Virus record (IMG/VR): IMGVR_UViG_3300042010_000106
Coordinates: 62,001 to 126,000 of that record
Length of the DNA: 64,000 nucleotides
Strand: one strand, 5' to 3'
This document shows positions 680 to 63,263 of this stretch, piece by piece. The position numbers were made by a program, and so were the translations under genes. Within the stretch, counting starts at the first letter, position 1. Every line of letters begins with the position of its first letter. Below the pieces are notes generated by a model, which saw only the letters and a program-made list of their open reading frames with translations, did not search any database and was not told where the DNA came from.

Positions 680-1411
680 GTGTCTGCAAAAACTAGCCTG
701 CAAAAAGAAGCAGAGAAAACGCACAAACGCATTCTGACAATTCTGTCTGAACAGTTGGGCGTTAAGGAAACCGAGTTGTCGCTAGAAAGCACCATGGCAG
801 ACCACGGCGGTGATTCCCTCGACGCTGTTGAAATCATCATGGCGCTTGAGGAAGAATTCGAAGTCGAAATCACCGACTGCGAAATGGACAAGATCAAAAC
901 GCCGCGCCAAGTAGTCGCGTTGATTCTGCCAAAGATTCACCTGCCAAGTCTTTCGTTCGATGACGCGTATATAGCTGCCTCCGAGCTGGAAGACATAAAG
1001 CCAACGAAGAAAAAACCGGCAGATAAAAAACCAGCACTGAAGAAAGTGGTACTCGCTGACGGTGCAACGTTGGTTCCCGGCGAGTCACGCAAACGGCACC
1101 TCGACGATTTGTTCGAATACACCATGAGCGATTCCGCCATGATGGAATTCGTGAAAGCCTTCAACACGGTTTTCAGCAATTCGGAATCTGCTTACCTGTA
1201 CGCTAGCAGAACGCCGAACGACAGCGATGCGTGGCGGATTCAAATGACAACCCGTCTGTCTGGTGAAGCCGTGGACGCAATTGCGCGCTTTGTAGAAGAC
1301 GCCGGTTTCTCTTTCGTCAAATCCACCGAACACACGGTGCGATTGCACGGCAGTAACCACGTCGGCATTGTCACAGCGATTCACCTGTCACTGACAACGT
1401 ACGGCCTCTAA
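680..1411 (+). CDS. acpP: acyl carrier protein (AcpP-like) domain fused to unknown C-terminal domain
   Basis: ILSEQLGV...GGDSLDAVEIIMALEEEFEVEITD matches type II ACP with phosphopantetheine Ser (codon 815-817); GTG 680 after AGGAG. Confidence 0.85.
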   Translation: MSAKTSLQKEAEKTHKRILTILSEQLGVKETELSLESTMADHGGDSLDAVEIIMALEEEFEVEITDCEMDKIKTPRQVVALILPKIHLPSLSFDDAYIAASELEDIKPTKKKPADKKPALKKVVLADGATLVPGESRKRHLDDLFEYTMSDSAMMEFVKAFNTVFSNSESAYLYASRTPNDSDAWRIQMTTRLSGEAVDAIARFVEDAGFSFVKSTEHTVRLHGSNHVGIVTAIHLSLTTYGL

Positions 1412-1422
1412 GGAAAGAAATC

Positions 1423-1758
1423 ATGGTTCGCGAAAAACTTTACATCGGCTCCAAAGTTATCGTCTGGAAAAACAAAAACACGTGGGACGACGACGCTGTA
1501 CAGTTCATGGTTCCTCAAACTGCAATTCTGTTTGAGCGCGACCGGGACACATTGTCTGACGACGGGTACGGCGAACACTACGGCGTACTGTTTTTGAACG
1601 ACGACGGCAGCGCCTCACATTTCGAATGGTGGGTTGAGGGTGACGAATGCGTGTTGGTCGATAACGAGCTGATCGCGAACCAAGATTTCATTTACGCAAA
1701 TCGCGGTTTGCTGGAAACGTGCGACGGCGAAGACGAACCGGACGAAGACGAATTGTAA
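1423..1758 (+). CDS. acidic hypothetical protein
   Basis: AAGGA RBS, phage-like codon usage. Confidence 0.7.
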   Translation: MVREKLYIGSKVIVWKNKNTWDDDAVQFMVPQTAILFERDRDTLSDDGYGEHYGVLFLNDDGSASHFEWWVEGDECVLVDNELIANQDFIYANRGLLETCDGEDEPDEDEL

Positions 1759-1787
1759 TCCACGAATTTTGCTAAGGACACATTGAC

Positions 1788-2735
1788 ATGACTATCAAAC
1801 TGAAAGATTTGCGCGCTCGCTTTCCGCAGTACCACGTAAACAAATCGGCCATCGGCGACGATTTCTGTTTCAGCATGAAAGGCATTCGCGCAGACGAAGC
1901 CGACTACGCGTACCTGTCGATTCGCAACAACGAATACAAAAGCGCAGCACGGCTTTTCCTGTTCCCAACGAAAAACAAACCGTGTGTTCCGTTCGCCGAA
2001 CAGGCCAGCTACAAATCGTACCACGCACTGAAAAAAGAATTGGTGCGCAACGGTGCGAAGTCGAAAGACATCACGAAAGACGACCTGCGCAAAAAGATGG
2101 ATGACGTTCTGGAAGAGGACGCCATGGAAATGCTCGACGTTCTGGAAGCGCATATGGCTGACGTGCTTTACAAACAGGATTGGTTGCACGTTTTCCTGTT
2201 GCCGAAACACAAAGCGCGGTTCGGTTATGACGACGGCACCATTGCAACCCGACGCGCCGCAGAGTTCGGTAACGATGTCGAAGCCAAAGCCCCTGTAAGC
2301 GTGTGTGAGACGGAATCGGCAGAAACCTGTGTCGGCGTTGATCCTGCCCGCGCTCGCTTCGTGGCTGACTTCACACGCGGTCTGGCGAAGGTTGATACGG
2401 TCGGGCCTACTGCCTACGATACAGCGCGTTGCATTCTGGAAGCGGTACGCGTTTACGAATCGTCTTACGATCACGAAGGCGCCGACGCCGAAACAAAACG
2501 TGTGTCCGACGCAAACGTCGCACTGCGCGCCGAAGCTGCACTGACTGGTCGTGAATTGAAACTGAGTGAAATGCAGTGGGGCTTTTACGAAAAGTATCAG
2601 CGCCTCACAATTCGCGAAGCGGTTGAAGCTGTCGTTCCTGAAAACTTTGTGCAGCCGGTTTACCTGCTGATCAAATACACGTGGAACGAATCGCTCGATT
2701 GGGCAAAAGAAATCATTTCTCACGAAGGGGAATAA
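1788..2735 (+). CDS. hypothetical protein (315 aa)
   Basis: long ORF, TAAGGA RBS. Confidence 0.75.
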   Translation: MTIKLKDLRARFPQYHVNKSAIGDDFCFSMKGIRADEADYAYLSIRNNEYKSAARLFLFPTKNKPCVPFAEQASYKSYHALKKELVRNGAKSKDITKDDLRKKMDDVLEEDAMEMLDVLEAHMADVLYKQDWLHVFLLPKHKARFGYDDGTIATRRAAEFGNDVEAKAPVSVCETESAETCVGVDPARARFVADFTRGLAKVDTVGPTAYDTARCILEAVRVYESSYDHEGADAETKRVSDANVALRAEAALTGRELKLSEMQWGFYEKYQRLTIREAVEAVVPENFVQPVYLLIKYTWNESLDWAKEIISHEGE

Positions 2736-2736
2736 A

Positions 2737-3081: not shown

Positions 3082-3092
3082 ATAAGCTGCTG

Positions 3093-8705: not shown

Positions 8706-10709
8706 ATGAAAAACTTTTCTGTTTTCGGTAAAGCAGTTCACAGCGCCTACGCCACCATTCTGCAAAACGACGCAGGCCGTAAGGATTCCGTTTTCGTGGT
8801 GGACATTACCGGCGACGAATTGTGGGCGCACTATCTCGCATCTTTCCCGGAAGGCACCAACCCGATTTTCCGCACGCGCACTGAATACGATTGTTCGTGC
8901 TGCCGCAACTTCATCAAAAACATCGGCGCGGTTGTCAGTATCAAAGACGGCAAGTTGCAATCGGTTTGGGATATCGAAATCGACGACGAACTTTTCCAGA
9001 CCATCGCCGATTCCATGTCGAAGCTCGTAAAGTCGCTGAACATTGCTGCACCTTTCATGGTGAGCGAACCGGCGTACGGCGCTGAAGTGACCCACCACAA
9101 AGACGAAACGTGGCACCACTTCCACGCAAAAGTGCCAACCATTTTCATGTGGAAGCACAACGAAAGCAATTACATTGGCGAGCGCAAAAACGACTTCGAA
9201 GGTTTGAAGCGTTCGATCAAAGAAATCGACAACGATGCAATTGAACAAGTGGCCGATTTGATCGACCAAGATTCGCTGCACAAAGGCCCGGAATACAAAG
9301 GCAAAGTTGACCTGCTGCGTAAGCTGAAAGCGGCGTACGAGAAACTGAAAACCAAACGCGCACGTGAACTGTTTCTGTGGGCGAACGCCAAGCCGGGTAC
9401 GCGTATTCACAGCACCGTTATCGGTACGCTGTTGGTTGATCTTTCGACCGGTGAAGACCTCGAAATCGCCGTGAAGAAATTCGAAGACAAAGTGAGCGGC
9501 ACCAACTTCAAACGTTCGAAAGCGCTGGTCACTCAAAAGATGATCGACGAAGCGCAAAAGCTCGTTGAAAAGTTGGGCATCGAAGATTCGCTCGCACGTC
9601 GTTTTGCAGTGCGCGAAGATATCAGCGTTAACGACGTTCTGTTCGTTGATGGTTCGGTGAAAAAGAAACTGCTGGGCGGTGCGTTCGACTCGATCAAACC
9701 AACCAAGAAAAACGTTCCTGTTCTGACGGACTTGATCGAAGATATCAGCATCAAAGATTTCCTGAGCAAAGTTCTGCCGAAAGCGGATACGGTCGAAGTG
9801 TTTGTGCAGAATGAACATCAACCAACTTTCGTTTCGCTGATTGCCCCGGTGAATGCCGATTCGAAACCGCTGTTCAAATGGGATAACGGTTTTTCGTGGG
9901 CGTACACTGGTGACGCTACTGAATCCATCCGTGAGCGTGTGAAGAAAGCAGGCGGCAAAGTTGACGGCGATATTCGTATTTCGCTGTCGTGGCACAACGC
10001 AACCGACCTCGATCTGAGCCTGCACAAAAACGGCGCGCACATTTACTACCACAACCGTAATGAGTTCGGCGCTACGCTCGACCTCGACATGAACGGTATC
10101 GACAAGAAAGATTCCGTTGCACCGGTAGAAAACATTGTGTGGCCGCGTCTGGCAAATGCACAACCGGGTACGTACTCGATTGTTGTGCACAACTATGCCA
10201 CACGTGCGACCGCCAACGTCGGCTTTGAAGTTGAAGTCGAAGTGATGGGCAAGCTGTACAGCTACGAAAATGCGAAAGGTTTGCGCGACAACGAGAAAGT
10301 GAAAATCGGCGAAGTAATTATCGCGAAAGGTGGCGAAGTTACTGTCGTTGGTTTGACCGAAGGTGGAGCGTCCAATGAGAAATGGGGCGTGCACACCGAG
10401 ACTTGGACGCCGGTTGATTTGATCACCCGTTCGCCAAACTTCTGGAACGATCAGAAGATCGGTCACGAACACATTTTCTTCATGCTGAAAAATTGCGTAC
10501 GTGATGATAGCGCACGCGGTTTCTACAACGAATACCTGCGTGATGATTTGAATACGCATCGCAAAGTGTTCGAAGTAGTTGGTGCGCAAATGCGTGTGGC
10601 TCCGAACGACCAGCAACTGAGCGGCCTTGGTTTCTCGATCACCAAGCGTGACGAAATCAAAGTGCGCGTGAAGGGTGCGACTAACCGCGTTCTGAACGTG
10701 AAGTTTTAA
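8706..10709 (+). CDS. large conserved phage protein with N-terminal CSCC motif and C-terminal YfaP/DUF2135-like domain
   Basis: YDCSCCRNF; DIRISLSWHNATDLDL...IYY...LDLDMN...VENIVW...GTYSIVVHNY. Confidence 0.75.
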   Translation: MKNFSVFGKAVHSAYATILQNDAGRKDSVFVVDITGDELWAHYLASFPEGTNPIFRTRTEYDCSCCRNFIKNIGAVVSIKDGKLQSVWDIEIDDELFQTIADSMSKLVKSLNIAAPFMVSEPAYGAEVTHHKDETWHHFHAKVPTIFMWKHNESNYIGERKNDFEGLKRSIKEIDNDAIEQVADLIDQDSLHKGPEYKGKVDLLRKLKAAYEKLKTKRARELFLWANAKPGTRIHSTVIGTLLVDLSTGEDLEIAVKKFEDKVSGTNFKRSKALVTQKMIDEAQKLVEKLGIEDSLARRFAVREDISVNDVLFVDGSVKKKLLGGAFDSIKPTKKNVPVLTDLIEDISIKDFLSKVLPKADTVEVFVQNEHQPTFVSLIAPVNADSKPLFKWDNGFSWAYTGDATESIRERVKKAGGKVDGDIRISLSWHNATDLDLSLHKNGAHIYYHNRNEFGATLDLDMNGIDKKDSVAPVENIVWPRLANAQPGTYSIVVHNYATRATANVGFEVEVEVMGKLYSYENAKGLRDNEKVKIGEVIIAKGGEVTVVGLTEGGASNEKWGVHTETWTPVDLITRSPNFWNDQKIGHEHIFFMLKNCVRDDSARGFYNEYLRDDLNTHRKVFEVVGAQMRVAPNDQQLSGLGFSITKRDEIKVRVKGATNRVLNVKF

Positions 10710-12249: not shown

Positions 12250-13019
12250 GCGCGCATTGTGTTGAACGTCACGGCAACGTTTTCTATTACGAAGGCACTC
12301 CCGGCGACCACGTTAGCAATAACATCAAGCAAGTGATTGCAGACCTGCAAGAAAAGCACGCTGCAATGCTTTTGAAATTCGTGATGGTCAAAGGTTCTGC
12401 TGAGCCTGTCGATTTGACCGGCATTCTGAAGTTCAACGGTAAAGAAATTCCCATGACGCGTATGTCGAATTGGGAACACGTGGAACAAGAATGGCACCGC
12501 CTGTGTGATGAAGAATCGGAACGCTGGCGCGCAAGCCCCGAGGGCATCGCCTACGCCGCCGAACGCGAAGCAGCGCGGGTAGCACGTCAAGAAGAAATGA
12601 ACGTGCTGTGGCCGAAGCTACAGGCGGTGCTACAGGAATATATCGACCTGAAGCCCGACGAAGGTGTGCAGCCGACCGGCACCGTCGCCGTTGCCCTGTT
12701 CGATTTGCTGGCCCCGTACATTCTGCTTTCCGATTGGAGCAACATCGAAACGTACCGGAAAGAATGCGTGGAATTGCTGAAGCAGTGCAATTACAAATCC
12801 GGTGAATATATCGGCCCTGCTGAATTGATCGACAGCGGTTACAAACAACGCGCTTTCATTGCCGGTCGATTGATCAGCGATTTCGAACAAGCGGGTTGCT
12901 TCCAACCGATTCTGGAACACATGATCATCAAAGCGCAGTTGAATACGCACAATCCAATTCCGTACAAACCTGCTGTTCGACCACCGCGTGGCAAAAGCCC
13001 TTTCGACACGGAACAATAA
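12246..13019 (+). CDS. hypothetical protein
   Basis: ATGA overlap, long ORF. Confidence 0.7.
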   Translation: MSAHCVERHGNVFYYEGTPGDHVSNNIKQVIADLQEKHAAMLLKFVMVKGSAEPVDLTGILKFNGKEIPMTRMSNWEHVEQEWHRLCDEESERWRASPEGIAYAAEREAARVARQEEMNVLWPKLQAVLQEYIDLKPDEGVQPTGTVAVALFDLLAPYILLSDWSNIETYRKECVELLKQCNYKSGEYIGPAELIDSGYKQRAFIAGRLISDFEQAGCFQPILEHMIIKAQLNTHNPIPYKPAVRPPRGKSPFDTEQ

Positions 13020-13020
13020 A

Positions 13021-13308
13021 ATGATTCACTCTAGCCTGAAACGCGCAAGCATTGCCGACGCCTTGCAAGCGATCAAGACCGCAATTAACGGTCGCATTAT
13101 TTCGCACATGTCCGAGGCTGATTTGCGACCGAGCGAAATGGCGCAAACAATGATGACGGATTTGATTACGATCCAACGTCTGACTGCTTATCAGCTCGAC
13201 GGCTACACCGTTGACGATATGGTTGCTTACGTAATGCGTCTCGGCTACGTTGCGCAAACCGCCTGTGACCAAGACGGAAAATTGACCTTCACTTTCTCCA
13301 AGGCGTAA
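13021..13308 (+). CDS. XRE/HigA2-like (HTH_37-type) helix-turn-helix protein
   Basis: KTAINGRIISHMSEADLRPSEMAQTM...IQRL...LDGYTVDDMVAYVMRLG pattern. Confidence 0.55.
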   Translation: MIHSSLKRASIADALQAIKTAINGRIISHMSEADLRPSEMAQTMMTDLITIQRLTAYQLDGYTVDDMVAYVMRLGYVAQTACDQDGKLTFTFSKA

Positions 13309-13310: not shown

Positions 13311-13652
13311 ATGAAATTCAATATGGATGCAGCACGCGCCAAATTCGGCCAGTGGCTGATTGTTTCGATTATCTCCGGCAATACCAAAGCAGACCCGGAA
13401 GCAGAACAACGCTTTGACCAGTTGATCAACGCGCCGGGTTACGACAGCTCCAAGCTCGACCTGAAGTTGATGGTCAACGGTCTGCCATTCGATTTGATGG
13501 ACGACACCCTTGAGGCAGTCGAAAAACATATCGACGACGAAATTGAAGAGCGTTCGCGGGCTTCGGCGTTAGCCATCAAGAAAATGGAAGCGCTGAAAAT
13601 TCTGCTGGACATGGGCGAAGAGGATATCGAGGAATTCCTCAATGGCGCTTGA
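13311..13652 (+). CDS. hypothetical protein
   Basis: packed ORF. Confidence 0.65.
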   Translation: MKFNMDAARAKFGQWLIVSIISGNTKADPEAEQRFDQLINAPGYDSSKLDLKLMVNGLPFDLMDDTLEAVEKHIDDEIEERSRASALAIKKMEALKILLDMGEEDIEEFLNGA

Positions 13653-13872
13653 TGAACTGTCGCGAAAACGGAACGCTAACATTGTTAGAACCGTTCGCGA
13701 AGAATTGAAAATCACACAGCAACAAGCAACGGCAATTTTCGGTGGTGGGCCTAACGCATTCTACCGGTATGAGAAAGGGCAAGAAGCCGTACCGCAACCC
13801 CTGTTAATTCTCATGCAGCTTTTGCAAAAACATCCTGAGCTTTTCTATCAAATAAAACTCCAACGTGTGTAG
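13642..13872 (+). CDS. mqsA: orphan MqsA-like antitoxin, C-terminal HTH domain only
   Basis: IVRTVREELKITQQQATAIFGGGPNAFYRYEKG...LLQKHPELF vs MqsA IVKVRKKLSLTQKEASEIFGGGVNAFSRYEKG...VLDKHPELL; no Zn-ribbon domain, no toxin nearby. Confidence 0.85.
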   Translation: MALDELSRKRNANIVRTVREELKITQQQATAIFGGGPNAFYRYEKGQEAVPQPLLILMQLLQKHPELFYQIKLQRV

Positions 13873-17930: not shown

Positions 17931-18971
17931 ATGATGGATATTCTGCTGTATTGCTGCGTGGCTTTGTTGGGAGGTTACGCCGCTTACAAATACACTAACC
18001 ATGTGCAGCTCGCATGGATCGTTAGTGCTGCTGGTTCAATCGTTGCCGTTATCTTTTTCTACGTGGCCCTGTGGCTGTCTGCGTCTTCGTACGAAATCAT
18101 TAGCGGCACCGTGACAGACAAAGAAGTTGTTTACGATCCGACAACCGAATCATATTCGTGTGGTACGGATTCCAAAGGCAACAGCAAAACCTGTACGCGA
18201 ACCGTGCCGCGCTGGCGCTTTGACGTAGAAGCCGACGTAGGCAGTTGGTACGATTATTCCTACAGCCGCTGGAACGTGCCAAGCATTTATGAGAATGCAA
18301 AAATTGGCGAACCGTTCGCGAAAGAAAAAATGTTCATGAACTATCAGTACGTGAACGATGAAACGGTTTTGGTGAACAAGCTCGACGCGTACGAAGGCTG
18401 GTTGCCTGAATACCCAAGCGTTTACGAAGGCTACAAAGTTCATCGCGCTTTTTCGAATGTGGTCAACGTATCCGAACTGAATGCTGCGCTGGCGAAAGCC
18501 GAACAAGTGTGGGGCAAGAAATTCGGCGTGAACGTAATCGTCAACGTCGTGCCTGAAAAAGAAGCAGGTTTCGCCAATGCCCTGCGCAACAAATGGGTAG
18601 GCGGCAAAAAGAACGATGTTGTTTTGACTCTCTACGTCAACGCAGAACACCGCGTTACGAAAGCAAACGTTTTCAGCCGGTCTACCTCGACCAAGCGCAC
18701 GGATACGTTCGCCGATTTCAATACAACGCTTCGTGAAAACGCACAACGAATTGACACGCTCGCTACGCAGAAAATCATTGGCGTTATCGACGCAGCTTTG
18801 CCACTGTTCGAACGTGAAGACTTAGCAGAGCATGACTTCGGCGCCACGTCGTATAGCGCTGCGTGGTACATAAACGCATTGGGCATATTCGTTGTTTTGC
18901 TCACCTGTTTCGGAACTGTAAAGTGGTTGGGCGGGCAACGTAGTTTCCGCCGTAGCTCATGGGCACGCTGA
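17931..18971 (+). CDS. conserved phage membrane protein (2 N-terminal TM, large periplasmic domain, C-terminal TM)
   Basis: YSC...KTCTRT motif, W-x-GGKKNDVV motif, TM helices. Confidence 0.75.
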   Translation: MMDILLYCCVALLGGYAAYKYTNHVQLAWIVSAAGSIVAVIFFYVALWLSASSYEIISGTVTDKEVVYDPTTESYSCGTDSKGNSKTCTRTVPRWRFDVEADVGSWYDYSYSRWNVPSIYENAKIGEPFAKEKMFMNYQYVNDETVLVNKLDAYEGWLPEYPSVYEGYKVHRAFSNVVNVSELNAALAKAEQVWGKKFGVNVIVNVVPEKEAGFANALRNKWVGGKKNDVVLTLYVNAEHRVTKANVFSRSTSTKRTDTFADFNTTLRENAQRIDTLATQKIIGVIDAALPLFEREDLAEHDFGATSYSAAWYINALGIFVVLLTCFGTVKWLGGQRSFRRSSWAR

Positions 18972-19066
18972 TGAAAAAGCAAAAAGGTTTTACCCTGATT
19001 GAACTGCTGATTGTGGTCGCCTTCTTGTTGGTTGTTGGCACCTCGATCTACAAAGCAACTCACTAA
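18971..19066 (+). CDS. 31-aa type IV prepilin-like peptide (class III signal plus hydrophobic helix only)
   Basis: my translation MKKQKG/FTLIELLIVVAFLLVVGTSIYKATH*; TGATG coupling; below the ORF-track length cutoff. Confidence 0.8.
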   Translation: MKKQKGFTLIELLIVVAFLLVVGTSIYKATH

Positions 19067-19091
19067 TTACCCACGCAAGGAAAATGAAGTA

Positions 19092-19646
19092 ATGTTCAGC
19101 AAATACAAAGGTTGGATCGCTGCTGGTGTTATCGCCGTTTTGGCACTGATGGCAATCAGCATCAACAACACCGTGGTAACGCAAGAAAGCGGAATCATCG
19201 GAGCCAACAAAGCACGTCAAGCCACGCTTTCGAATATCAGTCAGAAAGTGAAGGAAGTTATCGGCGTCAAAAACATGAACGTCGAGGACATCCAGAAAAC
19301 CGTCAACGAGCAAATCAAATTGCGCGCTGGTGCGGACGGCATGAAAAACATGGTGCTGATGTTGAAAGAACACAACATTGCCCCGTCGCAAGAAGCCGTG
19401 ATCAAGATCATGAACATCATCGACACAGGGCGTGAAACTTTCCTGAAGCAAGAAAACATGATGACTGATCGTAAGACTGCTGCCTGTATGTTCCGCAGCC
19501 GTTTCCCGAACAATTTCATCATCAACATTATGGGCAGTGCCAAACTGAACATTGGTTGCTTCGACGGCCAAGACGATTACGCGCCTTTGATGAACGACAA
19601 GGCAACAGAATCGTTCAAGTCCGGCGTTGATGGCGGTCTGTACTAA
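19092..19646 (+). CDS. LemA-like membrane-anchored helical protein
   Basis: N-terminal TM then NNTVVTQESGI...; C-terminal RFPNNFII; AAGGA RBS before ATG 19092. Confidence 0.65.
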   Translation: MFSKYKGWIAAGVIAVLALMAISINNTVVTQESGIIGANKARQATLSNISQKVKEVIGVKNMNVEDIQKTVNEQIKLRAGADGMKNMVLMLKEHNIAPSQEAVIKIMNIIDTGRETFLKQENMMTDRKTAACMFRSRFPNNFIINIMGSAKLNIGCFDGQDDYAPLMNDKATESFKSGVDGGLY

Positions 19647-29272: not shown

Positions 29273-29953
29273 ATGACCGTCAGCAAAATTGAAGAACGGG
29301 AACGCGACCTGTTTAGCACACCGCTTTGGTTCAGTCGTCCGAACATCCGTTTCGCATTCAACGCCAAGGCATATCAGAACGGCACGTTTGGAACGCGTGT
29401 GGGGCCGTCTGACAGTCTTTTGGAAGCGGGCCTACACGAACTGGCGCACTGCATTGATTTCGAGCTGACAGGCAAGCCTACGCGCCTTCAGTACGAAGCG
29501 TTAGAATTCAAACGGCCTTATGCACACGCGTTGTTTGCGTACGGACGCTGGCACGATGATTTCCCGCTGACCACGCGGGGCAGTTGGGCAGAGATTCGCA
29601 CGAATGCAATTCAAGCGCTTTTGATGATGAAAGCGTTCGGCACCTGCTACCGCTATTCGTATGATGCGATGATTGATGACATCGTAGAATGCAGCGTTGA
29701 AGAAATGTTGCTGAAGAGTGCAAAGTCATTGTGGGTTCTCGACGACGCAATCAATTTCAAAACTGAAGTGCTGGGCAGCAATCCAATCGGTGCGCCCGTC
29801 GAAGAATTGTATTTGAACGCGATGATGAAATACTACAATCAGATTGATACGCCTTTCGGCACACAGAGAATTGTGCGGGCGTTGGATCGTGTAAACCTTC
29901 GTTTGGGGAAGTTGCATGCAGCGCATGAATCTGTCAACGGTGCAAAAAGCTGA
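29273..29953 (+). CDS. HExxH zincin-like protein
   Basis: GLHELAH plus downstream E (WAEIRTNA). Confidence 0.55.
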   Translation: MTVSKIEERERDLFSTPLWFSRPNIRFAFNAKAYQNGTFGTRVGPSDSLLEAGLHELAHCIDFELTGKPTRLQYEALEFKRPYAHALFAYGRWHDDFPLTTRGSWAEIRTNAIQALLMMKAFGTCYRYSYDAMIDDIVECSVEEMLLKSAKSLWVLDDAINFKTEVLGSNPIGAPVEELYLNAMMKYYNQIDTPFGTQRIVRALDRVNLRLGKLHAAHESVNGAKS

Positions 29954-34092: not shown

Positions 34093-34332
34093 ATGAGCCG
34101 GGGCATAACAAAAGGGCAAGTGTTGATCGACGATATCAGCACAACACTCAAAGAAAAAATTGGCGCCGAAATTGTGCGCCGTGGTTTGACCCAAGTAGAC
34201 GTGACGAAGAAATTCGGCATTTCGAAAATCGACCTGTACAATTTGATTTCGGGTAAGGGCAGCGTCCCACTGGCGCGGGTGATCATGCTCGCCGCCGACC
34301 TCGACATCAAAATGGATTTCAAAATCGGCTAA
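34093..34332 (+). CDS. XRE-family HTH regulator
   Basis: IVRRGLTQVDVTKKFGISKIDLYNLISGKGSVPLARVIMLAADLD. Confidence 0.75.
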   Translation: MSRGITKGQVLIDDISTTLKEKIGAEIVRRGLTQVDVTKKFGISKIDLYNLISGKGSVPLARVIMLAADLDIKMDFKIG

Positions 34333-34342: not shown

Positions 34343-35053
34343 ATGATTAATCTCGATTTGTTGAATCTCACAACACCAGAACCAAAGTATCCGGGTAGTA
34401 CGGTAAGCATCATTTACCCGCCCGGTTCTTTCCCACAAAACGAATTCTTTTCGGTGTTGCCGAACGGTGATTTGAAATTGTGGGCACCGACTAAAGGCGT
34501 GTCGTCAAAGTCTACCAGCCGTACGCGTACTGAGCTGCGCGAGTGCATCGAAAACGGTATCGTCTACAACTGGCGCTATCCTGTCTTTGCACACCACTGG
34601 CTGCGAGTGGCAATGACCGTGCTGCAAGTTCCGAAAAAAGGTGAAACGGTTATCGGGCAAATCCACGTACACGGAAATACCCGACCGCCTGTAAAACTTT
34701 CGTTCGATAAAGCTGCTGACGGCATCGGCCAATTGACTGTGGGTTTCCGCACAACATTCGATCAGGTAAATCCTGTCGATTACGTGCTGATGCGTGACAT
34801 TCCAGTCGGTACGCGGTTCACGTTCAACATTCACGTGACTGCATCTGGAGCTGTTTTGTTTTCGTCGAGTTTCACCGACGCGAACGGACAGAAACAAACT
34901 GGAAATATCACGCTGCCTTTTGACGAAAGTTGGAAGGCGCAAGGTTTGTACTTCAAGGCTGGTGTTTACAACCAAGAAGATCCAACCGAATTTACCCTCG
35001 ACACTGAAGGTAGCGCAGCACTGATTCACAAGCTGGAAATAACACACGATTAA
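34343..35053 (+). CDS. polysaccharide lyase family 7 alginate lyase
   Basis: all three PL7 motifs: RTELRE, IGQIH, YFKAGVYNQ; no signal peptide. Confidence 0.9.
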   Translation: MINLDLLNLTTPEPKYPGSTVSIIYPPGSFPQNEFFSVLPNGDLKLWAPTKGVSSKSTSRTRTELRECIENGIVYNWRYPVFAHHWLRVAMTVLQVPKKGETVIGQIHVHGNTRPPVKLSFDKAADGIGQLTVGFRTTFDQVNPVDYVLMRDIPVGTRFTFNIHVTASGAVLFSSSFTDANGQKQTGNITLPFDESWKAQGLYFKAGVYNQEDPTEFTLDTEGSAALIHKLEITHD

Positions 35054-36383: not shown

Positions 36384-36887
36384 ATGTCGATTACTTCTGA
36401 AACTTTGCTGACTATCGAAGAACGTACCCTTGTCGGTATGTCGCTGCTGCACGACATCGTGAACGCACGCGAATACGTAACCGATATTGCGCACGGTGTT
36501 TTCGACAAAGAATTGCGACTCGGTTTGTTCTACGCAATTCACGACCGCTATGCCACCAATGCCGAAGAATGCAGCACGCCATTGATCGACAATCAGATGG
36601 ATGTTTTCAAACTCAAGGCCGCTGGCATTTCGCACGACCAACAACGCACGGAATCCCTGTTCGCTGCACTGGACGCATACGACCGTCGTATGGTGGGCCG
36701 TAACGGCAAAGGTGGTGCACCGGATCAACAGGCCCGCGTGATGGAAATGCGCCGCAAAGAATTCGTTGCACAAACGCAGCCGCACGCCGAAGGCACAGTG
36801 AAAGAAATTGCTGCGAAATACAACCTGTCGCTTTCCGAAGTTCGTCGCCGTAAAGCTGCTGGTATTCCGTTCAATCAGGAAGCGTAA
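36384..36887 (+). CDS. protein with C-terminal HTH
   Basis: GTVKEIAAKYNLSLSEVRRRKAAG. Confidence 0.65.
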   Translation: MSITSETLLTIEERTLVGMSLLHDIVNAREYVTDIAHGVFDKELRLGLFYAIHDRYATNAEECSTPLIDNQMDVFKLKAAGISHDQQRTESLFAALDAYDRRMVGRNGKGGAPDQQARVMEMRRKEFVAQTQPHAEGTVKEIAAKYNLSLSEVRRRKAAGIPFNQEA

Positions 36888-40384: not shown

Positions 40385-41368
40385 ATGAAAATCGTGACTT
40401 CTGCTGATTCGTTGAACGCTGTTGAATCCATGGTGCGGATGCTGGAAGAACGCGAATGGGCAGAGCATGCAGGCGTGTGTCCTTTGACGCAGCGTCTGGA
40501 AACTTGCATCACCACAATGCACAACGAAATTGCTACAAAGAATGTCGAGTGCGAAAACTACGAACGTGACAACGCACAGGCCGTTGATTTCCTCGGCGGT
40601 CAACGTGATGGCCTTGGCGATTTGTGCAGCCAGTACCGCGACGAAATCTGGCGTTTGCGCGACGGTATCAATTCCCTGTTGAATGGCATTACGCTTGGCT
40701 CAACGGAAACCACGTTGGTTGCACTGCGTGATTTAGCAACGTCGAATATTCAGTGCTGCCCGCCGTTGCCCGGTCAAGTGGTTGTTGGTATGAACGTCCG
40801 TTCGTTTGTGGAGCGCTACGCAAATGCGTTCGACGCGCTGATTGACGATCCGGCAGAACGTGAAGACTTGAAAGAGCGTTCGCGTATCATGCGAGTTATC
40901 CGTAACGCAGTCACCGAACGTTACGGCAAGAAAGAATATACGTGGCTCACTAACACCCTCGGTTTTTCGCAAACTATTTGGCAAGCGTTGTACGAAGGAC
41001 ACATCGACGAATTGGAGCTGGACACCCTGACAAGAATTGCAGAACTGTTGGGCATTCCGACCGATGAAAGTTTGAAGCCGATTCATCCTCACGAATTGAT
41101 TGAAGACGAAAACGATCTGGCCCGCATCGCGCACGAATGGGCACGGGCAATTGTTGTGCATGCACGTGCCATGAATCAAACTGGTGTGGCTGAGCGTTAC
41201 ATGGTTCCGCAATTTCGTGAGCGTTTCAAAATCACCACGGAAGAATGGTTGATTCTGGAAGTGATGCACAGACAATCGTGGGCAACTGACGCGTTGTCGA
41301 TTTCGCGCCTGATTCAAATTGCAAACGATGGTGGTGTGAACCTTCCTGTAATTGATCTGGACAAATAA
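40385..41368 (+). CDS. multi-domain protein with one or two C-terminal XRE/HigA2-like HTH domains
   Basis: RSRIMRVIRNAV...LGFSQTIWQALYEGHIDELELDTLTRIAELLG; a second, weaker unit ending LSISRLIQIANDGG. Confidence 0.6.
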   Translation: MKIVTSADSLNAVESMVRMLEEREWAEHAGVCPLTQRLETCITTMHNEIATKNVECENYERDNAQAVDFLGGQRDGLGDLCSQYRDEIWRLRDGINSLLNGITLGSTETTLVALRDLATSNIQCCPPLPGQVVVGMNVRSFVERYANAFDALIDDPAEREDLKERSRIMRVIRNAVTERYGKKEYTWLTNTLGFSQTIWQALYEGHIDELELDTLTRIAELLGIPTDESLKPIHPHELIEDENDLARIAHEWARAIVVHARAMNQTGVAERYMVPQFRERFKITTEEWLILEVMHRQSWATDALSISRLIQIANDGGVNLPVIDLDK

Positions 41369-43253: not shown

Positions 43254-43703
43254 ATGACTCTCCAAGTTCGCGAATGCAGTGGTTGTGTAATCCTCAACGA
43301 AGCAGCCACCGAAGTTTATTTGGTCACGTCTTCGAAAGATCGCACCAAGTGGGTTTTTCCAAAGGGCGGAATCGAAGCCGGTTTGACCGCTGAAGAAAAT
43401 GCGCAAAAGGAAACCCGCGAAGAAGCAGGCGTAGCCGTTACGATTGTGCAGAAGCTGGATACGCAAGATTCCGAACGCGACCACCACGACGACAATGCAG
43501 AACCCGGCCCATACATTTCCCGCGATACGTATTTCCTCGCTCACTTCCTTTCGTTCGTGGATTGGGAAGAGTACACAAAGCGCAATCGCGGTTGGATCAA
43601 GGTAAGCGAAGCGCAAGCCTTGCTTAATGGGCGTGGCGGTAACGTTTTGGAACTCGCCATTGCTGCGCAGAAGGCTATCACCGCAGGGGCTAACCCCTTG
43701 TAA
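43254..43703 (+). CDS. Nudix hydrolase (DIPP/Aps1-like subfamily pattern)
   Basis: LVTSSK...WVFPKGGIEAGLTAEENAQKETREEAGV; DWEE...RxRxW. Confidence 0.85.
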   Translation: MTLQVRECSGCVILNEAATEVYLVTSSKDRTKWVFPKGGIEAGLTAEENAQKETREEAGVAVTIVQKLDTQDSERDHHDDNAEPGPYISRDTYFLAHFLSFVDWEEYTKRNRGWIKVSEAQALLNGRGGNVLELAIAAQKAITAGANPL

Positions 43704-55000: not shown

Positions 55001-55717
55001 ATGTCTGAATACCACGGTGAAAGTATCATGAGCGGACACAAACACGGTGTACGTTACACGGCTTCTTTTTGGGATCGTTTGTTCGGTCGCGCTCACTGGA
55101 TCGAAGAAGTAAACATCCGCAATGCGTACCTCGAAAGCAAAGAAGAAGATTTGGATCTTCTGCGCCAAGCGGTAAATGATTTGCAACCGGAGAAAGTTCT
55201 GGAGCAAGAAGGAAAGCACCTCGACGAAATCGGTTTGTTGAAAGTTCGTATTCGCGATCTGGAAAGCGAATTGGCTGCTTACAGCATTCAAGAAAATGCG
55301 CGTGAGGATCGACGTAATGCACGCGCAGCGCATTTCACACCGGAACCGGTTCTGATTAAACCGGAACGCGCTCAACAATTGGGCCGTGACGTACAGGGTC
55401 GTGGTCGTGGTTACGTGGCACCGAACAGCGGCGCGCATGCCACTAGCGGGCAAGTCGGCAGTACCCCACAAGACGGCGGTAGCGGCCTTTTGATGCAGGC
55501 GGCAGTTCTGCACACGGTATTGGCGTCTGATAGCGCCCCTACGCGCTCTGAGGCGGCTTGCCATACCTACCGTGAGACGTACAGCACGCCGGAACAACGC
55601 TCTGAGCCTGCATATTGCGCCCCTGAGCCTACCCGGTCGGAGCCGTCCTATAGTTCCCCGGATAGCGGCAGTTACGGCGGTGATTCGGGCGGCGGTGGCG
55701 GCGGTGGTTGTGACTAA
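55001..55717 (+). CDS. coiled-coil protein with Ser/Gly low-complexity tail
   Basis: RSE/EP repeats; ends SYGGDSGGGGGGGCD. Confidence 0.7.
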   Translation: MSEYHGESIMSGHKHGVRYTASFWDRLFGRAHWIEEVNIRNAYLESKEEDLDLLRQAVNDLQPEKVLEQEGKHLDEIGLLKVRIRDLESELAAYSIQENAREDRRNARAAHFTPEPVLIKPERAQQLGRDVQGRGRGYVAPNSGAHATSGQVGSTPQDGGSGLLMQAAVLHTVLASDSAPTRSEAACHTYRETYSTPEQRSEPAYCAPEPTRSEPSYSSPDSGSYGGDSGGGGGGGCD

Positions 55718-56223
55718 TGAGTAAACAGGTAATTCTGTTTAATTCATACGAGAATGAAATTTTCTCGGCGATGTGGCCTGCGCCTTTTATGTATAAAGGC
55801 ACGGTGTACAAAAGCATCGAAGCGTATTATCAATTCCGAAAGCTGGATAAAACGGAAACAGAATTGCGCGGGAAAATTCTCGCAGCGTTCGATCCGTACA
55901 AAGCCAAGCATTTTGGTAGCAAGAAAGCTGGTGGCAAACCTTCAAGCAAACATGACGTTGAACGTTTCGACATCATGCGTATCGGCATTCGCGAATCGTA
56001 CATGCAAAACCCGTGGCGTTTGATTGCGCTGATGAATACGGGAAAAGCAAAACTTTCGCACCTTGCTGAGTGGGATGATTTTTGGGGCGTGAACGCAGCA
56101 GGTAAAGGCGGTGATCAGTACGGCATTCTGACAACGGAATTTCGTGACAGCATGATTGGCGTAGATATTTGGAAAGCTTGTAAAGCACACAAGCTGACTG
56201 AAAAGAAAAAGAAGAAAAAGTGA
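55717..56223 (+). CDS. NADAR (YbiA-like) hydrolase
   Basis: FS...PF..KGTVYKSIEAYYQFRK, DPYKAKHFG, LMNTG, DDFWG...GG. Confidence 0.85.
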   Translation: MSKQVILFNSYENEIFSAMWPAPFMYKGTVYKSIEAYYQFRKLDKTETELRGKILAAFDPYKAKHFGSKKAGGKPSSKHDVERFDIMRIGIRESYMQNPWRLIALMNTGKAKLSHLAEWDDFWGVNAAGKGGDQYGILTTEFRDSMIGVDIWKACKAHKLTEKKKKKK

Positions 56224-61556: not shown

Positions 61557-61806
61557 AATCCACACCGGGAACAAACTGGTGCCCTCAACAGCATGACCTT
61601 TCGACGGGCGGAATTACCACTGTCGATTGGTATGCTAGGCAACGCAAATTAAAACTGTCGCTTATTCTCGATTTGTTGAACGGTGTTAAATTTAATGGCT
61701 TGGGTATTGTTATAAACCATTACAAAGGTGGCAGGGTTCCATACGAAGCCAGCACCGTTCTAACAGTCGAAGAAATGCGAAAGTTGAATTCGTTCAGGAA
61801 ACGTAA

Positions 61807-62190
61807 ATGAAATGGAAGCACGGCTCTACCAGAAGTGTTTTGCTGATTGGTAAGTACGCGATCAAGTTTCCCATGATTAAGCACTGGCGGAATTTCCTGC
61901 AAGGTATTTTGTGCAATGACACAGAATATTCGTTCAGCCATTTGGATACGCCGCTGCTGGCTCCTGTGCTGTGGCGTTCGTGGGGATGTATCGTTATCGT
62001 CATGCCGCGTGCTGACGTGAAAAGCTACGACGCCGAAGATCGTTTCGCATATGTTGAAGAATTCTGGAAGCTTGTTGAACAAGTCGAAGGACTCAACAAA
62101 GACACGATCAAAAAGATTGTGGAAAACAAAGTGTGTTCCATTGGCATGATTAACGGCAAGCCTGTCGCCATCGACTACGGGATTATCTAA
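61807..62190 (+). CDS. minimal protein-kinase-like phage protein
   Basis: GSTRSV...YAIKFP, N-x-x-E, terminal G..NGKPVAIDYG. Confidence 0.6.
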   Translation: MKWKHGSTRSVLLIGKYAIKFPMIKHWRNFLQGILCNDTEYSFSHLDTPLLAPVLWRSWGCIVIVMPRADVKSYDAEDRFAYVEEFWKLVEQVEGLNKDTIKKIVENKVCSIGMINGKPVAIDYGII

Positions 62191-62838
62191 ATGAATCGTC
62201 CAACTCCTTACCGCCCACGTGTGCCGGATGACCTGTTTGAAGAGCTGAAAAAATTCAGCGACGGCACATTCAAAGGTTTGCATGAACTGACGCTGCGCTA
62301 CATTCGCGAAGGCATTGAAAAAGATCGCGCTGTGCAGGCTGGCAAAGAACGTAAAGTTCCCGGCAACGGGTATTTCCCATTCAGTGATGTCACGATCAAC
62401 AATTGGGCAAAGTATTACGGCATCGACGTGATGGAAGTTGCAGCCGCTTACCACGCAATGGAACATATCGCGCTCGATAGCGTTGATCGTGTGAACGGTG
62501 AATTCAGTCTGGACGGCCACGACATCAAAGGTTTGAACAAATTCTTTTTCGGCGACAATTGGGAAAAAGACATGCTGTTGCGCCAACTGGCTGCAATCGA
62601 CGCTGCTGCAAATCACGTTGTAGGTGCAGCGACAGAAGAGCGACCGGAAGAAAGATCAGATATTACCGTGGCGATTCTTGCGGAACGTTTGTCTGTTCGT
62701 GCTGCTGAAATCATCAAGTTCATGTTCAAGCGCGGCACACCGGCCACCATGCACCAATTGCTGAGTGATGCAGAAGTCGAACTCGTTACCAACGCAATGC
62801 AGGTCGTTCCAAAACTCGCCAAACGGACAAAGAAATGA
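62191..62838 (+). CDS. RHH DNA-binding protein fused to translation initiation factor IF2 N-terminal domain
   Basis: N-term [15 protein letters not shown]...[10 protein letters not shown]; C-term [34 protein letters not shown] matches pseudomonad InfB [34 protein letters not shown] (recalled). Confidence 0.75.
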   Translation: [215 protein letters not shown]

Positions 62839-63263
62839 AACCAGTTAAACAAGCCTTGTACAACAGCCGCACCGCTGACAAATTCGTTGTTCGTTTGCCG
62901 GACGGCTGGCGTGAAAAGATTGAAGCTTTTGCGCGTGTAAATCACCGTAGCATGAACAGTCATTTGCTGACCTATATCGAAGCGTGCCTGAAGTTGGAAG
63001 AGGCGGAAAACTTCGGTTTGTTGGAAGCGTTGCTGTCTGATGAACCGGGCGGCGCAATCGTGGTTGCACAAGGCCCACGCGTTCCGTACGCAATCAATAT
63101 TCCGGTAATGTTTGAAGGCCACGTTTGGCTGGTGGTAAAACTCAACGTTGAAGACGGCGCTGTGTGGGCGGATTTGGAGCGTACCGATTCGGAATTCGAA
63201 TACGATAACGGACGCCGTTGTATCACTTGCCTGCATAAACATTTGGAGCCGTTCGGTGCGTGA
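62835..63263 (+). CDS. amrZ: AmrZ/AlgZ-like Arc-family regulator with non-homologous C-terminal domain
   Basis: [42 protein letters not shown] vs AmrZ [42 protein letters not shown] (recalled). Confidence 0.85.
   Translation: [142 protein letters not shown]

What the first reader, a model, noticed from the sequence alone, without database searches (positions are those of the whole stretch)
680..63263. Candidate system: a dispersed toolkit of host-protein fragments aimed at the Pseudomonas surface and biofilm
Seen: at least five genes carry only one module of a host protein: ACP (680), MqsA HTH (13642), prepilin helix (18971), IF2_N (62659) and AmrZ RHH (62835). An intact PL7 alginate lyase (34343) is also present. 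Known: AmrZ controls alginate and motility, pilins form phage receptors, and MqsA-type antitoxins also repress chromosomal stress and biofilm genes. Inference: the phage remodels the cell envelope on three levels (transcription, pilus assembly, polymer degradation) using dominant-negative fragments of host proteins. The genes are not clustered, so their joint function is a hypothesis.
Basis: inference. Interest (0 to 1): 0.75.

Follow-up and report, generated by a model that had tools for sequence, protein, structure and literature searches.

The report
Unlinked host-like genes in Pseudomonas jumbo phage
The six host-like genes are real, but they are separately acquired accessory genes of a Lu11/PaBG-type Pseudomonas jumbo phage, not one envelope-remodelling system; a 31-residue headless pilin and an AmrZ look-alike are the parts worth testing.

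Summary
All six domain calls hold at the stated coordinates. Each passes Pfam's curated cut-off: PP-binding, MqsA HTH, prepilin N_methyl, IF2_N, Arc/AmrZ RHH and a complete PL7 alginate lyase. The window is part of a 312-kb rhizosphere phage contig related to Pseudomonas phages Lu11, PaBG, HRDY3 and pf16.

- **Patchy distribution:** the genes have independent phyletic distributions.
  - The AmrZ-like gene is in PaBG, HRDY3 and Noxifer.
  - Its IF2_N neighbour was found only in an ~80% relative.
  - The mini-pilin is in an 84% relative and in near-identical strains. It is absent from 78%, 73% and 67% relatives.
  - The MqsA-type HTH is in no database phage.
  - PL7 sits in other phages, with unrelated flanks.
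- **No overlap:** the ACP, PL7, IF2_N and strict AmrZ-like hit lists share no database record.
- **Not all fragments:** the ACP is a complete domain with its DSL serine.

Individually, three genes plausibly act on the cell surface and have published precedents: phage Gp53 (AmrZ-like), truncated phage PilA, and phage alginate lyases. They are new members or variants of known kinds. Interest is modest.

The parts
680..1411 (+). 243-aa protein: complete acyl-carrier-protein domain (aa 17-82, DSL serine present) plus a ~160-aa C-terminal extension of unknown fold
   Evidence: Pfam PP-binding 3.9e-15. PDB ACPs 1.7e-13 over the whole domain. PHROG 5934 'acyl carrier protein'. NCBIfam scores fall just under the ACP cut-offs. 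RBS and GTG start. ACP-domain homologues in pf16, Lu11 and HRDY3. Atlas search of the extension gave nothing.
13642..13872 (+). 76-aa stand-alone MqsA-type XRE helix-turn-helix protein. It has no zinc-ribbon N-domain and no toxin neighbour.
   Evidence: Pfam MqsA_antitoxin, profile 69-130/131. MqsA C-domain 3fmy 2.8e-13 with GGGxNAFxRYEKG kept. TIGR03830 58.1 bits, below the 61.8 cut-off. The upstream ORF 13311-13652 is acidic with no Pfam hit. No match in 50,697 phage records. Relatives at 75-99% identity exist only on metagenome contigs. Absent from the 67% relative L043.
17931..18971 (+). Conserved 346-aa protein (PHROG 2087, annotated 'putative membrane protein' in PaBG). Its TGA stop overlaps the ATG of the mini-pilin ORF (TGATG).
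18971..19066 (+). 31-codon 'headless prepilin' ORF, MKKQKG|FTLIELLIVVAFLLVVGTSIYKATH: class III leader, Phe+1, Glu+5 and the hydrophobic alpha1-N helix only. It is an insertion of about 91 nt between two conserved genes.
   Evidence: Pfam N_methyl 1.4e-8. TIGR02532 passes. The insertion is present in the 84% relative L040 and absent from the 78%, 73% and 67% relatives and from PaBG, Lu11 and HRDY3. It is present without indels in contigs of independent runs X3 (18 differences in 1,035 nt) and X4 (28 in 744 nt). The two listed changes attributable to those contigs inside the ORF are synonymous.
19092..19646 (+). 184-aa LemA-like virion structural protein, the conserved downstream neighbour of the insertion
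   Evidence: PHROG 1383 'virion structural protein' 3.3e-40. PaBG gp45 is annotated 'structural protein, lemA-like'. 95-96% identical in L041 and L042.
34343..35053 (+). 236-aa complete PL7 alginate lyase. No signal peptide is evident by eye in the N-terminus.
   Evidence: Pfam Alginate_lyase2 1.3e-37. P. aeruginosa PA1167 (1vav) 5.1e-24 over full length, with the RTELRE, QIH and YFKAGVY motifs aligned. 18 phage records, all but one an unnamed 'Bacteriophage sp.', are Pseudomonas phages; none is Lu11, PaBG, HRDY3 or pf16. 69-86% identity in 7 other IMG/VR contigs with unrelated flanks.
62191..62838 (+). 215-aa protein. The N-terminal part (aa 1-139) has a ribbon-helix-helix-like start, which is an inference. 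It is fused to a host-type IF2_N subdomain (aa 156-204, nt 62656-62802). Its end overlaps the next gene by 4 nt.
   Evidence: Pfam IF2_N 4.7e-9. P. aeruginosa IF2 residues 266-312, 9e-7. 26/42 identical to a Pseudomonas-type IF2 fragment. P0160 (135 aa) equals aa 3-139 without IF2_N. The pair with the Arc gene is conserved in L044 at 71% identity. The unrelated upstream gene in L045 shows the pairing is recent. The AF2 model is of low confidence, pLDDT 56.
62835..63263 (+). 142-aa AmrZ-like regulator: N-terminal arm and RHH (aa 1-57), then a helix and a small SH3/Tudor-like beta domain (aa ~90-133) in place of AmrZ's tetramerisation tail
   Evidence: Pfam Arc 1.8e-14. AmrZ 3qoq 8.6e-14. The model's best PDB match is 3qoq (TM 0.80 on the target, 58% identity), and the C-domain has pLDDT ~90. 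S11 R12 K16 V18 R20 R26 are invariant and N41 nearly so in 20 phage homologues; these match the AmrZ DNA-contact residues S13 R14 K18 V20 R22 R28 N43. Homologues in PaBG ('alginate and motility regulator'), HRDY3 and Noxifer.

Best explanation
The window is a one-strand stretch of small accessory genes from a ~312-kb Lu11/PaBG-like ('Lupandier' group) Pseudomonas jumbo phage. The contig was assembled from a rhizosphere metagenome. The six genes are real, but they are independent accessory genes with separate histories, and the shared theme is largely produced by annotation bias.

Most likely roles:
1. The AmrZ-like protein (62835-63263) is a lineage-conserved phage transcription factor. It reads the same GGC half-sites as host AmrZ. 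It probably binds host promoters such as amrZ, fleQ and alg/psl, and possibly phage promoters too, as shown for phage PhiPA1019 Gp53. This is inferred from conserved contact residues.
2. Its upstream partner is a phage RHH-like protein that recently captured the IF2_N subdomain of a Pseudomonas-type IF2. Its function is unknown.
3. The 31-aa ORF is a recently inserted, translationally coupled headless prepilin. It is probably inserted into the inner membrane, cleaved by the prepilin peptidase, and interferes with type IV pilus or type II secretion assembly. That would be superinfection exclusion, and it is an inference.
4. The PL7 enzyme is an active alginate lyase moving between phages. It probably clears alginate around soil pseudomonads at entry or release.
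5. The MqsA-type protein is one of several small XRE-type HTH regulators in the window.
6. The ACP fusion belongs to a known phage ACP family and is probably a functional carrier protein, not a decoy.
For: Identity of the phage:
- 100% match to IMGVR_UViG_3300042010_000106, 312,325 bp.
- The 667-aa and 346-aa proteins are 39-57% identical to those of pf16, Lu11, HRDY3 and PaBG.
- The best-holding sequencing runs are rhizosphere and soil metagenomes.

Independence of the six genes:
- tblastn against 50,697 phage records at E <= 1e-3 gave PL7 18, AmrZ-like 76 (29 at E <= 2e-5), ACP 24, IF2_N 1 and MqsA-like 0 records.
- No record is shared between the PL7, ACP, IF2_N and 2e-5 AmrZ lists.
- The mini-pilin is present only in the 84% relative and in 96-98% identical strains. 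It is absent at 78%, 73% and 67% and in PaBG, Lu11 and HRDY3.
- The MqsA-like gene is absent from the syntenic stretch of the 67% relative, Lu11 and HRDY3.
- The IF2_N partner is present in the 80% relative but replaced by an unrelated gene in the 43% relative.
- PL7 at 69-86% identity lies in seven other IMG/VR contigs. In six of these the 3-kb flanks share no ORF with the whole window; the seventh contig ends inside the gene.

Ascertainment:
- 88 ORF products were scanned, and ten pass a Pfam cut-off.
- These are the six, plus NADAR, NUDIX, GNAT and Sigma70_r4.

Precedents:
- Each of ACP, MqsA-like, Arc-like and PL7 falls in an existing PHROG family.
- Gp53 (PMC13650114).
- PaBG algZ, noted in PMC7412058.
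- Truncated ~60-aa phage PilA in lytic Pseudomonas phages (PMC12952977, section 17; sequence example).

AmrZ contact residues are conserved.
Against: - Three of the six (AmrZ-like, mini-pilin, PL7) do converge on alginate, pili and motility biology. AmrZ regulates both alginate and twitching, so some functional cooperation in this one phage cannot be excluded.
- All six co-exist in this genome. The fetched pieces of the closest relatives (80-85%) are too short to tell whether they keep the full set.
- No expression data were obtained, so temporal classes are unknown.
- Absence calls in database phages rest on tblastn at E <= 1e-3 with short queries. That threshold missed the divergent ACPs of Lu11 and HRDY3, which a local search found.
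Confidence: 0.78

Rival explanations
1. One reading: the six genes form a coordinated toolkit of dominant-negative host-protein fragments. Together they remodel the Pseudomonas envelope and biofilm at the levels of transcription, pilus assembly and polymer degradation.
For: - All six domains are real.
- AmrZ-like, pilin and PL7 touch related biology.
- Four are true single modules with host-type nearest relatives.
- Gp53 shows that an AmrZ-like phage protein can lower motility and biofilm (PMC13650114).
Against: - No clustering: the genes are spread over 63 kb among roughly 120 ORFs.
- Independent, patchy distributions, and no database phage appearing in two of the fully listed hit lists.
- Different ages of acquisition within the lineage.
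- The ACP is a complete domain with its active serine.
- ACP, IF2_N and MqsA-HTH have no known envelope link.
- The set is six of the ten recognisable domains in the window, which points to selection by annotatability.
Confidence: 0.07
2. Inward-looking or inert reading. The AmrZ-like, RHH/IF2_N and MqsA-type proteins regulate only the phage's own promoters. RHH and XRE repressors are classic phage regulators. The 31-codon pilin ORF is a non-functional scrap of captured DNA.
For: - Arc and Mnt are phage repressors, and Mnt is the second PDB hit.
- Many temperate Pseudomonas phages carry AmrZ-like Arc domains.
- The window holds several other weak HTH hits.
- The mini-pilin is very young in the lineage and only 31 codons long, and only two substitutions are available to judge selection.
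- No donor pilin gene was found.
Against: - The base- and backbone-contacting residues of AmrZ are kept exactly, and are invariant across phage homologues that have diverged to about 27-40% overall identity. This fits shared target sites with the host regulator.
- Gp53 binds host promoters (PMC13650114).
- The mini-pilin keeps an intact leader, Gly-1/Phe+1/Glu+5 and a start coupled to the upstream stop. It persists in independent samples with the two listed changes both synonymous.
- Short pilin-like ORFs of 62-107 aa recur in unrelated lytic phages (PMC12952977).
Confidence: 0.2
3. Counter-defence reading. The MqsA-type HTH, together with the NADAR and NUDIX genes nearby, is an orphan antitoxin-like or anti-defence gene aimed at host toxin-antitoxin immunity rather than at the envelope.
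For: - MqsR/MqsA is described as a phage-defence system (PMC13409141).
- Phages carry orphan antitoxin-like NADAR enzymes against DarTG1 (PMC11825919).
- A NADAR gene is in the window.
- The DNA-reading motif of MqsA is kept.
Against: - The protein lacks the zinc-ribbon N-domain through which MqsA binds MqsR, so it cannot neutralise the toxin in the known way.
- No toxin-like neighbour.
- No experimental precedent for an HTH-only MqsA in a phage was found.
Confidence: 0.1

Closest known systems
Phage PhiPA1019 Gp53 and PaBG gp302/303 'AlgZ/AmrZ-like' proteins (PMC13650114; PMC7412058)
   Same: - Phage-encoded AmrZ-like ribbon-helix-helix protein.
- The N-terminal arm and beta-strand residues that contact DNA in AmrZ are kept.
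- PaBG, HRDY3 and Noxifer homologues were found directly.
   Different: - The C-terminal half here is a small beta-barrel domain shared only with close metagenomic relatives.
- It is preceded by an overlapping RHH-like/IF2_N gene.
- No binding or phenotype data exist for this protein.
Pseudomonas AmrZ (PDB 3qoq)
   Same: About 60% identity over residues 1-57. S13, R14, K18, V20, R22, R28 and N43 equivalents are all present. It is the best structural match to the model.
   Different: AmrZ's C-terminal tetramerisation region is replaced, so oligomeric state and activator function cannot be assumed.
Truncated phage PilA-like proteins (~60 aa) of lytic Pseudomonas phages, and prophage P-FimU (Sztanko et al., Cell Rep 2026, PMC12952977)
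   Same: - Phage-encoded pilin N-terminus with prepilin leader, Phe+1 and Glu+5, and no globular head.
- Proposed to enter or block the type IV pilus machine.
- An example, Ab04 ORF32 (62 aa), was read here.
   Different: - Only 31 codons (25 after cleavage), about half the length of the described family.
- Not homologous beyond the motif.
- Inserted between a membrane protein gene and a LemA-like virion gene of a jumbo phage.
- P-FimU proteins are full-length and functional in the pilus.
PL7 alginate lyases: P. aeruginosa PA1167 (1vav), and PL7 genes of Pseudomonas phages (Psa21, phiK7A1, vB_PpuM-*)
   Same: Full-length single-domain PL7 with the conserved R-x-E-L-R, Q-I-H and Y-F-K-A-G-x-Y motifs. 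Found almost only in Pseudomonas phages.
   Different: - 35-40% identical to the nearest named phage copies.
- Not fused to a tail fibre or spike.
- Activity and substrate preference are untested.
E. coli MqsA antitoxin (3fmy, 3gn5)
   Same: The C-terminal XRE-type HTH and dimerisation domain, with the GGGxNAFxRYEKG recognition segment.
   Different: No zinc-binding N-domain, no MqsR-like partner, and below the NCBIfam family cut-off.
Phage acyl carrier proteins (PHROG 5934; phiRSL1, fHe-Yen9-04, pf16, HRDY3 annotations)
   Same: AcpP-like four-helix domain with the DSL serine. Common in large phages.
   Different: It carries a ~160-aa C-terminal extension with no detectable relatives. The HRDY3 236-aa ACP has the domain at the opposite end.

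Membership tests
   Spread from 680 to 63263 among roughly 120 ORFs. Only the IF2_N and AmrZ-like genes are adjacent.
   No overlap between the PL7, ACP, IF2_N and strict AmrZ hit lists. The MqsA-like gene is in no phage record. Presence and absence differ stepwise in relatives.
   No 8-mer occurs in four or more of the 30 intergenic gaps. No RNA data were laid on these genes.
AmrZ (Arc-type RHH regulator) | RHH fold with the AmrZ N-terminal arm and base-contacting Lys/Val/Arg on the beta-strand | tested here: met
AmrZ (Arc-type RHH regulator) | C-terminal tetramerisation domain | tested here: not met
   No similarity beyond residue ~57. The model shows a beta-barrel-like domain instead.
AmrZ (Arc-type RHH regulator) | Binding to amrZ, algD or fleQ operators | not testable with these tools
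   Needs EMSA or DAP-seq.
Type IV pilin / pseudopilin | Class III leader, Gly-1, Phe+1, Glu+5, hydrophobic alpha1-N | tested here: met
   Sequence read directly. Pfam N_methyl and TIGR02532 both above cut-off.
Type IV pilin / pseudopilin | Globular C-terminal head domain | tested here: not met
   Stop after codon 31. The same stop is implied in independent samples, whose contigs span it with no indels and no listed change there.
Type IV pilin / pseudopilin | Cleavage and methylation by the prepilin peptidase | not testable with these tools
   Needs expression and mass spectrometry in pilD+ and pilD- laboratory strains.
MqsA antitoxin | C-terminal HTH DNA-binding and dimerisation domain | tested here: met
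MqsA antitoxin | N-terminal CxxC zinc-ribbon toxin-binding domain | tested here: not met
   Only profile positions 69-130 are matched. The protein is 76 aa. TIGR03830 is below cut-off.
MqsA antitoxin | Adjacent MqsR-type toxin gene | tested here: not met
   Neighbours have no toxin-like Pfam hit, and the upstream product is acidic.
Acyl carrier protein | PP-binding four-helix domain with a DSL serine | tested here: met
Acyl carrier protein | Score above the NCBIfam ACP subfamily or equivalog cut-offs | tested here: not met
   68.6 against 71 bits (subfamily). 63-66 against 70-106 bits (equivalogs).
Acyl carrier protein | Phosphopantetheinylation | not testable with these tools
   Needs mass spectrometry after co-expression with a PPTase.
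Translation initiation factor IF-2 | IF2_N subdomain | tested here: met
Translation initiation factor IF-2 | GTPase and C-terminal domains | tested here: not met
   TIGR00487 scores 21 against 424 bits. Only 47-50 residues match.
PL7 alginate lyase | Full-length beta-jelly-roll domain with catalytic Arg, Gln/His and Tyr motifs | tested here: met
PL7 alginate lyase | Lyase activity on alginate | not testable with these tools
   Needs an A235 assay on polyM, polyG and acetylated alginate.

The most novel reading that the evidence does not exclude
The 31-codon ORF is a working 'headless prepilin', the smallest phage-encoded pilin mimic so far. After cleavage by the host prepilin peptidase, a 25-residue alpha1-N stub would poison type IV pilus and/or type II secretion assembly in infected soil pseudomonads.

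Separately, the adjacent RHH/IF2_N and AmrZ-like genes would form a host-mimicking regulatory pair. On this reading, domain-level capture of host modules is a recurrent strategy in this jumbo phage, though not a single system.
Probability: 0.25. Interest if true: 0.6.

Novelty: new member of a known kind. Interest (0 to 1): 0.32.

Why it matters
- Grouping every recognisable domain in a mostly unannotated phage region into one 'system' can mislead. Here the phyletic test separates the genes cleanly.
- The useful residue is a short list of testable single genes from an uncultured rhizosphere jumbo phage:
  - an AmrZ look-alike with every DNA-contact residue conserved;
  - an extreme pilin truncation that extends a family so far only noted in passing;
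  - a mobile PL7 lyase;
  - a captured IF2 subdomain of unknown use.
- If the pilin stub works, it would define a minimal peptide inhibitor of pilus assembly.

Tried and rejected
- **Near-identity search:** megablast of 12 kb, and tblastn of the 492-aa protein, against phages gave no match.
- **Metagenome scan:** a scan with the 346-aa protein found no relative.
- **Donor search for the pilin stub:** an exact 32-mer scan of 185,579 species genomes hit only two unrelated MAGs. The similarity ended with the motif, so no donor was identified.
- **Toxin partner for the MqsA-like gene:** neighbours show no toxin-like domain.
- **Complex prediction of the 31-aa peptide with P. putida prepilin peptidase:** verdict 'no answer' (score 0.02). 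This is not evidence either way.
- **AF2 model of the RHH/IF2_N protein:** mean pLDDT 56 from an 8-row alignment. It was too poor for fold search, so the RHH assignment of its N-terminus stays an inference from the sequence pattern and the 62-aa homologue P0163.
- **Atlas search of the ACP C-terminal extension:** no usable hit.
- **Fold search of the AmrZ-like C-domain:** only weak SH3, Tudor and eIF5A-N-like matches (E >= 0.02), so no function was assigned.
- **Shared promoter search:** no 8-mer recurs in the 30 intergenic gaps.
- **IMG/VR scans with single short proteins:** the AmrZ-like and MqsA-like queries mostly recovered only the source contig, because the method needs exact 8-mers.
- **Supplementary tables of PMC12952977:** not held.
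- **First structure job:** It was re-run without them.

Full report
**What the window is.** All long ORFs lie on the + strand, and GC is 48-51% throughout. A crude tiling gives about 120-130 mostly small genes. The window is identical to part of IMGVR_UViG_3300042010_000106, a 312,325-bp viral contig; window coordinate plus 62,000 gives the contig coordinate. No phage record is near-identical at the DNA level. Two conserved proteins place the contig. The 667-aa protein (8706-10709) is 55-57% identical to those of Pseudomonas phages pf16, Lu11 and HRDY3. The 346-aa protein (17931-18971) is 39-45% identical to those of PaBG, Lu11 and HRDY3. The PaBG paper calls this the 'Lupandier' group of jumbo phages (PMC7412058). 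The runs that hold the sequence best are rhizosphere and soil metagenomes. The likely hosts are soil pseudomonads rather than P. aeruginosa specifically.

**The observation.** Pfam confirms all six domain calls above curated cut-offs, at the coordinates given. Details and corrections:
- **ACP (680-1411).** This is a complete AcpP-like domain (aa 17-82) with the DSL serine. It matches solved ACPs end to end. A ~160-aa extension with no detectable relatives follows it. It is not a fragment.
- **MqsA-type protein (13642-13872).** It matches only profile positions 69-130 of 131, and the MqsA C-domain structure at 2.8e-13. The GGGxNAFxRYEKG segment is kept. It has no zinc-ribbon domain and no toxin-like neighbour.
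- **'Prepilin helix' (18971-19066).** This is a free-standing 31-codon ORF, MKKQKGFTLIELLIVVAFLLVVGTSIYKATH. Its ATG overlaps the TGA of the upstream gene. The next gene starts at 19092 in another frame. That gene is a LemA-like virion structural protein.
- **IF2_N (aa 156-204 of the 215-aa product of 62191-62838).**
  - It is most similar to P. aeruginosa IF2 residues 266-312.
  - It is 26/42 identical to a Pseudomonas-type IF2 fragment from metagenomes.
  - Residues 3-139 exist on their own in a 135-aa relative, so this is a fusion of a phage protein with a captured host subdomain.
- **Arc-domain protein (62835-63263).**
  - Its best PDB hit is AmrZ (8.6e-14, about 60% identity over 57 residues), far ahead of Mnt.
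  - AmrZ contacts DNA through S13, R14, K18, V20, R22, R28 and N43 (PMC3325190).
  - The equivalents here (S11, R12, K16, V18, R20, R26, N41) are present, and invariant or nearly so in 20 phage homologues.
  - The AF2 model (pLDDT 75) matches 3qoq best for the N-terminal half. It shows a confident small beta domain at residues ~90-133 in place of AmrZ's tetramerisation tail.
- **PL7 lyase (34343-35053).** It aligns over its full length with PA1167 (5.1e-24), with the RxELRE, QIH and YFKAGxY motifs in register.

That is what the data show.

*Database phages.* Against 50,697 phage records:

| Gene | Records at E <= 1e-3 | Notes |
|---|---|---|
| PL7 | 18 | 17 Pseudomonas phages (P. putida vB_PpuM phages, Psa21, others) and one unnamed 'Bacteriophage sp.'; none of Lu11, PaBG, HRDY3, pf16 |
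| AmrZ-like | 76 (29 at 2e-5) | includes Noxifer, PaBG, HRDY3 and many unrelated Pseudomonas phages; at 2e-5, not Lu11, pf16 or any PL7 carrier |
| ACP | 24 | mostly large phages, including pf16 |
| IF2_N protein | 1 | one unrelated 42-kb Pseudomonas phage |
| MqsA-like | 0 | |

No record appears in two of the fully listed hit lists.

*Relatives within the lineage.* The ages of acquisition differ.
- The mini-pilin is an insertion of about 91 nt. It is present in an 84% relative, where the contig ends inside it. It is absent from relatives at 78%, 73% and 67%, and from PaBG, Lu11 and HRDY3.
- The MqsA-like gene is missing from the syntenic stretch of the 67% relative, Lu11 and HRDY3. It is kept at 75-99% identity in a few metagenomic relatives.
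- The IF2_N gene accompanies the AmrZ-like gene in an 80% relative, but an unrelated gene replaces it in a 43% relative.
- PL7 copies 69-86% identical sit in seven other IMG/VR contigs, two of them 300-312 kb long. In six of these the flanking 3 kb share no ORF with this window; the seventh contig ends inside the gene.
- A local search also found divergent ACP domains in Lu11 and HRDY3. ACP and the AmrZ-like gene are therefore old in the group, and the other four are recent.

*Ascertainment.* I scanned 88 ORF products against Pfam, and only ten pass a curated cut-off. The 'toolkit' is thus most of what can be recognised at all. The four left out have no envelope theme.

**What each part most likely does.**
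- **AmrZ-like protein.**
  - PaBG's authors already annotated their copy as algZ and speculated on host manipulation (PMC7412058).
  - A 2026 study shows that phage PhiPA1019 Gp53, a 126-aa AmrZ-like RHH protein made early, binds and represses ftsZ, fleQ, pslA and amrZ and lowers motility and biofilm (PMC13650114).
  - The exact conservation of AmrZ's contact residues makes shared target sites the best reading here. The mechanism would be direct repression or competition, not necessarily 'dominant-negative'. This is an inference.
- **Mini-pilin.**
  - Sztanko et al. (PMC12952977) note a family of ~60-residue truncated PilA proteins in six lytic Pseudomonas phages. They propose incorporation into, or inhibition of, the pilus.
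  - I read one such protein (Ab04 ORF32, 62 aa) and short pilin-like ORFs of 99 and 107 aa in Xanthomonas and Acinetobacter phages.
  - The present ORF is half that size.
  - It is not an assembly artefact. Contigs from independent studies span it without indels: X3 with 18 differences in 1,035 nt, and X4 with 28 in 744 nt.
  - The two listed changes attributable to those contigs inside the ORF (18994 C>T, 19048 C>T) are synonymous. The 18970 G>A change alters the upstream stop to TAA and leaves the ATG intact.
  - Two synonymous changes are only weak evidence of selection. Function is plausible, not shown.
- **PL7 lyase.** It is probably an active enzyme that moves between Pseudomonas phages.
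- **MqsA-type protein.** It is most simply one more small XRE regulator.
- **ACP fusion.** It belongs to a known phage family (PHROG 5934).

**Verdict.** The host-module idea is partly right: it holds for four of the five claimed fragments. The joint system is not supported. The finding resolves into ordinary, separately acquired accessory genes of a jumbo phage, each a new member or variant of a kind already described. Two sub-features are worth a bench test: the 31-aa headless prepilin, and the AmrZ-like/IF2_N gene pair.

Noticed in passing
window 55717-56223 (+): 168-aa NADAR-domain protein (Pfam 3.5e-13, with a weak NCBIfam hit to a NADAR anti-phage family). Phage NADAR enzymes are published as orphan antitoxin-like counter-defence against DarTG1 (PMC11825919).
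   Followed up: partly
window 36384-36887 (+): 167-aa protein whose only hit is Sigma-70 region 4 (24.3 bits against a 24.1 cut-off). It could be a phage sigma-like or anti-sigma factor. No PHROG or NCBIfam hit.
   Followed up: partly
window 43254-43703 (+) and 29916-30497 (+): A NUDIX hydrolase (2.2e-13) and a weak GNAT acetyltransferase hit. Relatives L044 and L045 also carry NUDIX and DUF4326 genes downstream of the AmrZ-like gene.
   Followed up: no
window 8706-10709 (+): The 667-aa protein (DUF8224 in a relative, PHROG 1735) has full-length homologues in 537 phage records. Their hosts include Salmonella, Klebsiella, Bacillus, Caulobacter and Vibrio. This is an unusually widespread large phage protein of unknown function; one record annotates it as a putative RNA polymerase.
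   Followed up: partly
window 18934-19051; L040 end: Contig depth roughly doubles over the pilin motif in all four runs. Short contigs with other flanks (reading on as ...AIIGILA...) map there. These are pilin genes of other organisms in the same samples, sharing 35-47 nt. The Logan contig of the 84% relative breaks inside the motif, possibly for the same reason.
   Followed up: partly
window 19084-19092: A three-codon ATG-AAG-TAA sits between the mini-pilin stop and the LemA-like gene's ATG. Five of seven bases at 19085-19091 differ in the X3 and X4 strain variants, while the ORFs on both sides are conserved.
   Followed up: no
window 630-650: Inverted repeat GTGCA(ttcttgcgag)TGCAC, about 30 nt upstream of the ACP gene's start. 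It could be a hairpin between genes.
   Followed up: no
window 12988-13308, 34093-34332, 40385-41368 (+): Three further weak helix-turn-helix hits (HTH_37, HTH_3, HTH_19), all below cut-off. The HTH_3 gene lies 10 nt upstream of the PL7 gene here, but not in the other contigs that carry PL7.
   Followed up: partly
L052-L058 (IMG/VR contigs): Close PL7 copies occur in a second ~312-kb viral contig of the same metagenome (3300042010_000129) and in a 300-kb contig. Their flanks are unlike anything in this window. Either these are related phages with the gene elsewhere in the genome, or the gene has moved between distinct jumbo phages.
   Followed up: partly
L064 5917-6886 (HRDY3): HRDY3 has two adjacent genes annotated as ACP. 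The 236-aa one has its ACP domain at the C-terminal end, opposite to the window's 243-aa protein.
   Followed up: partly
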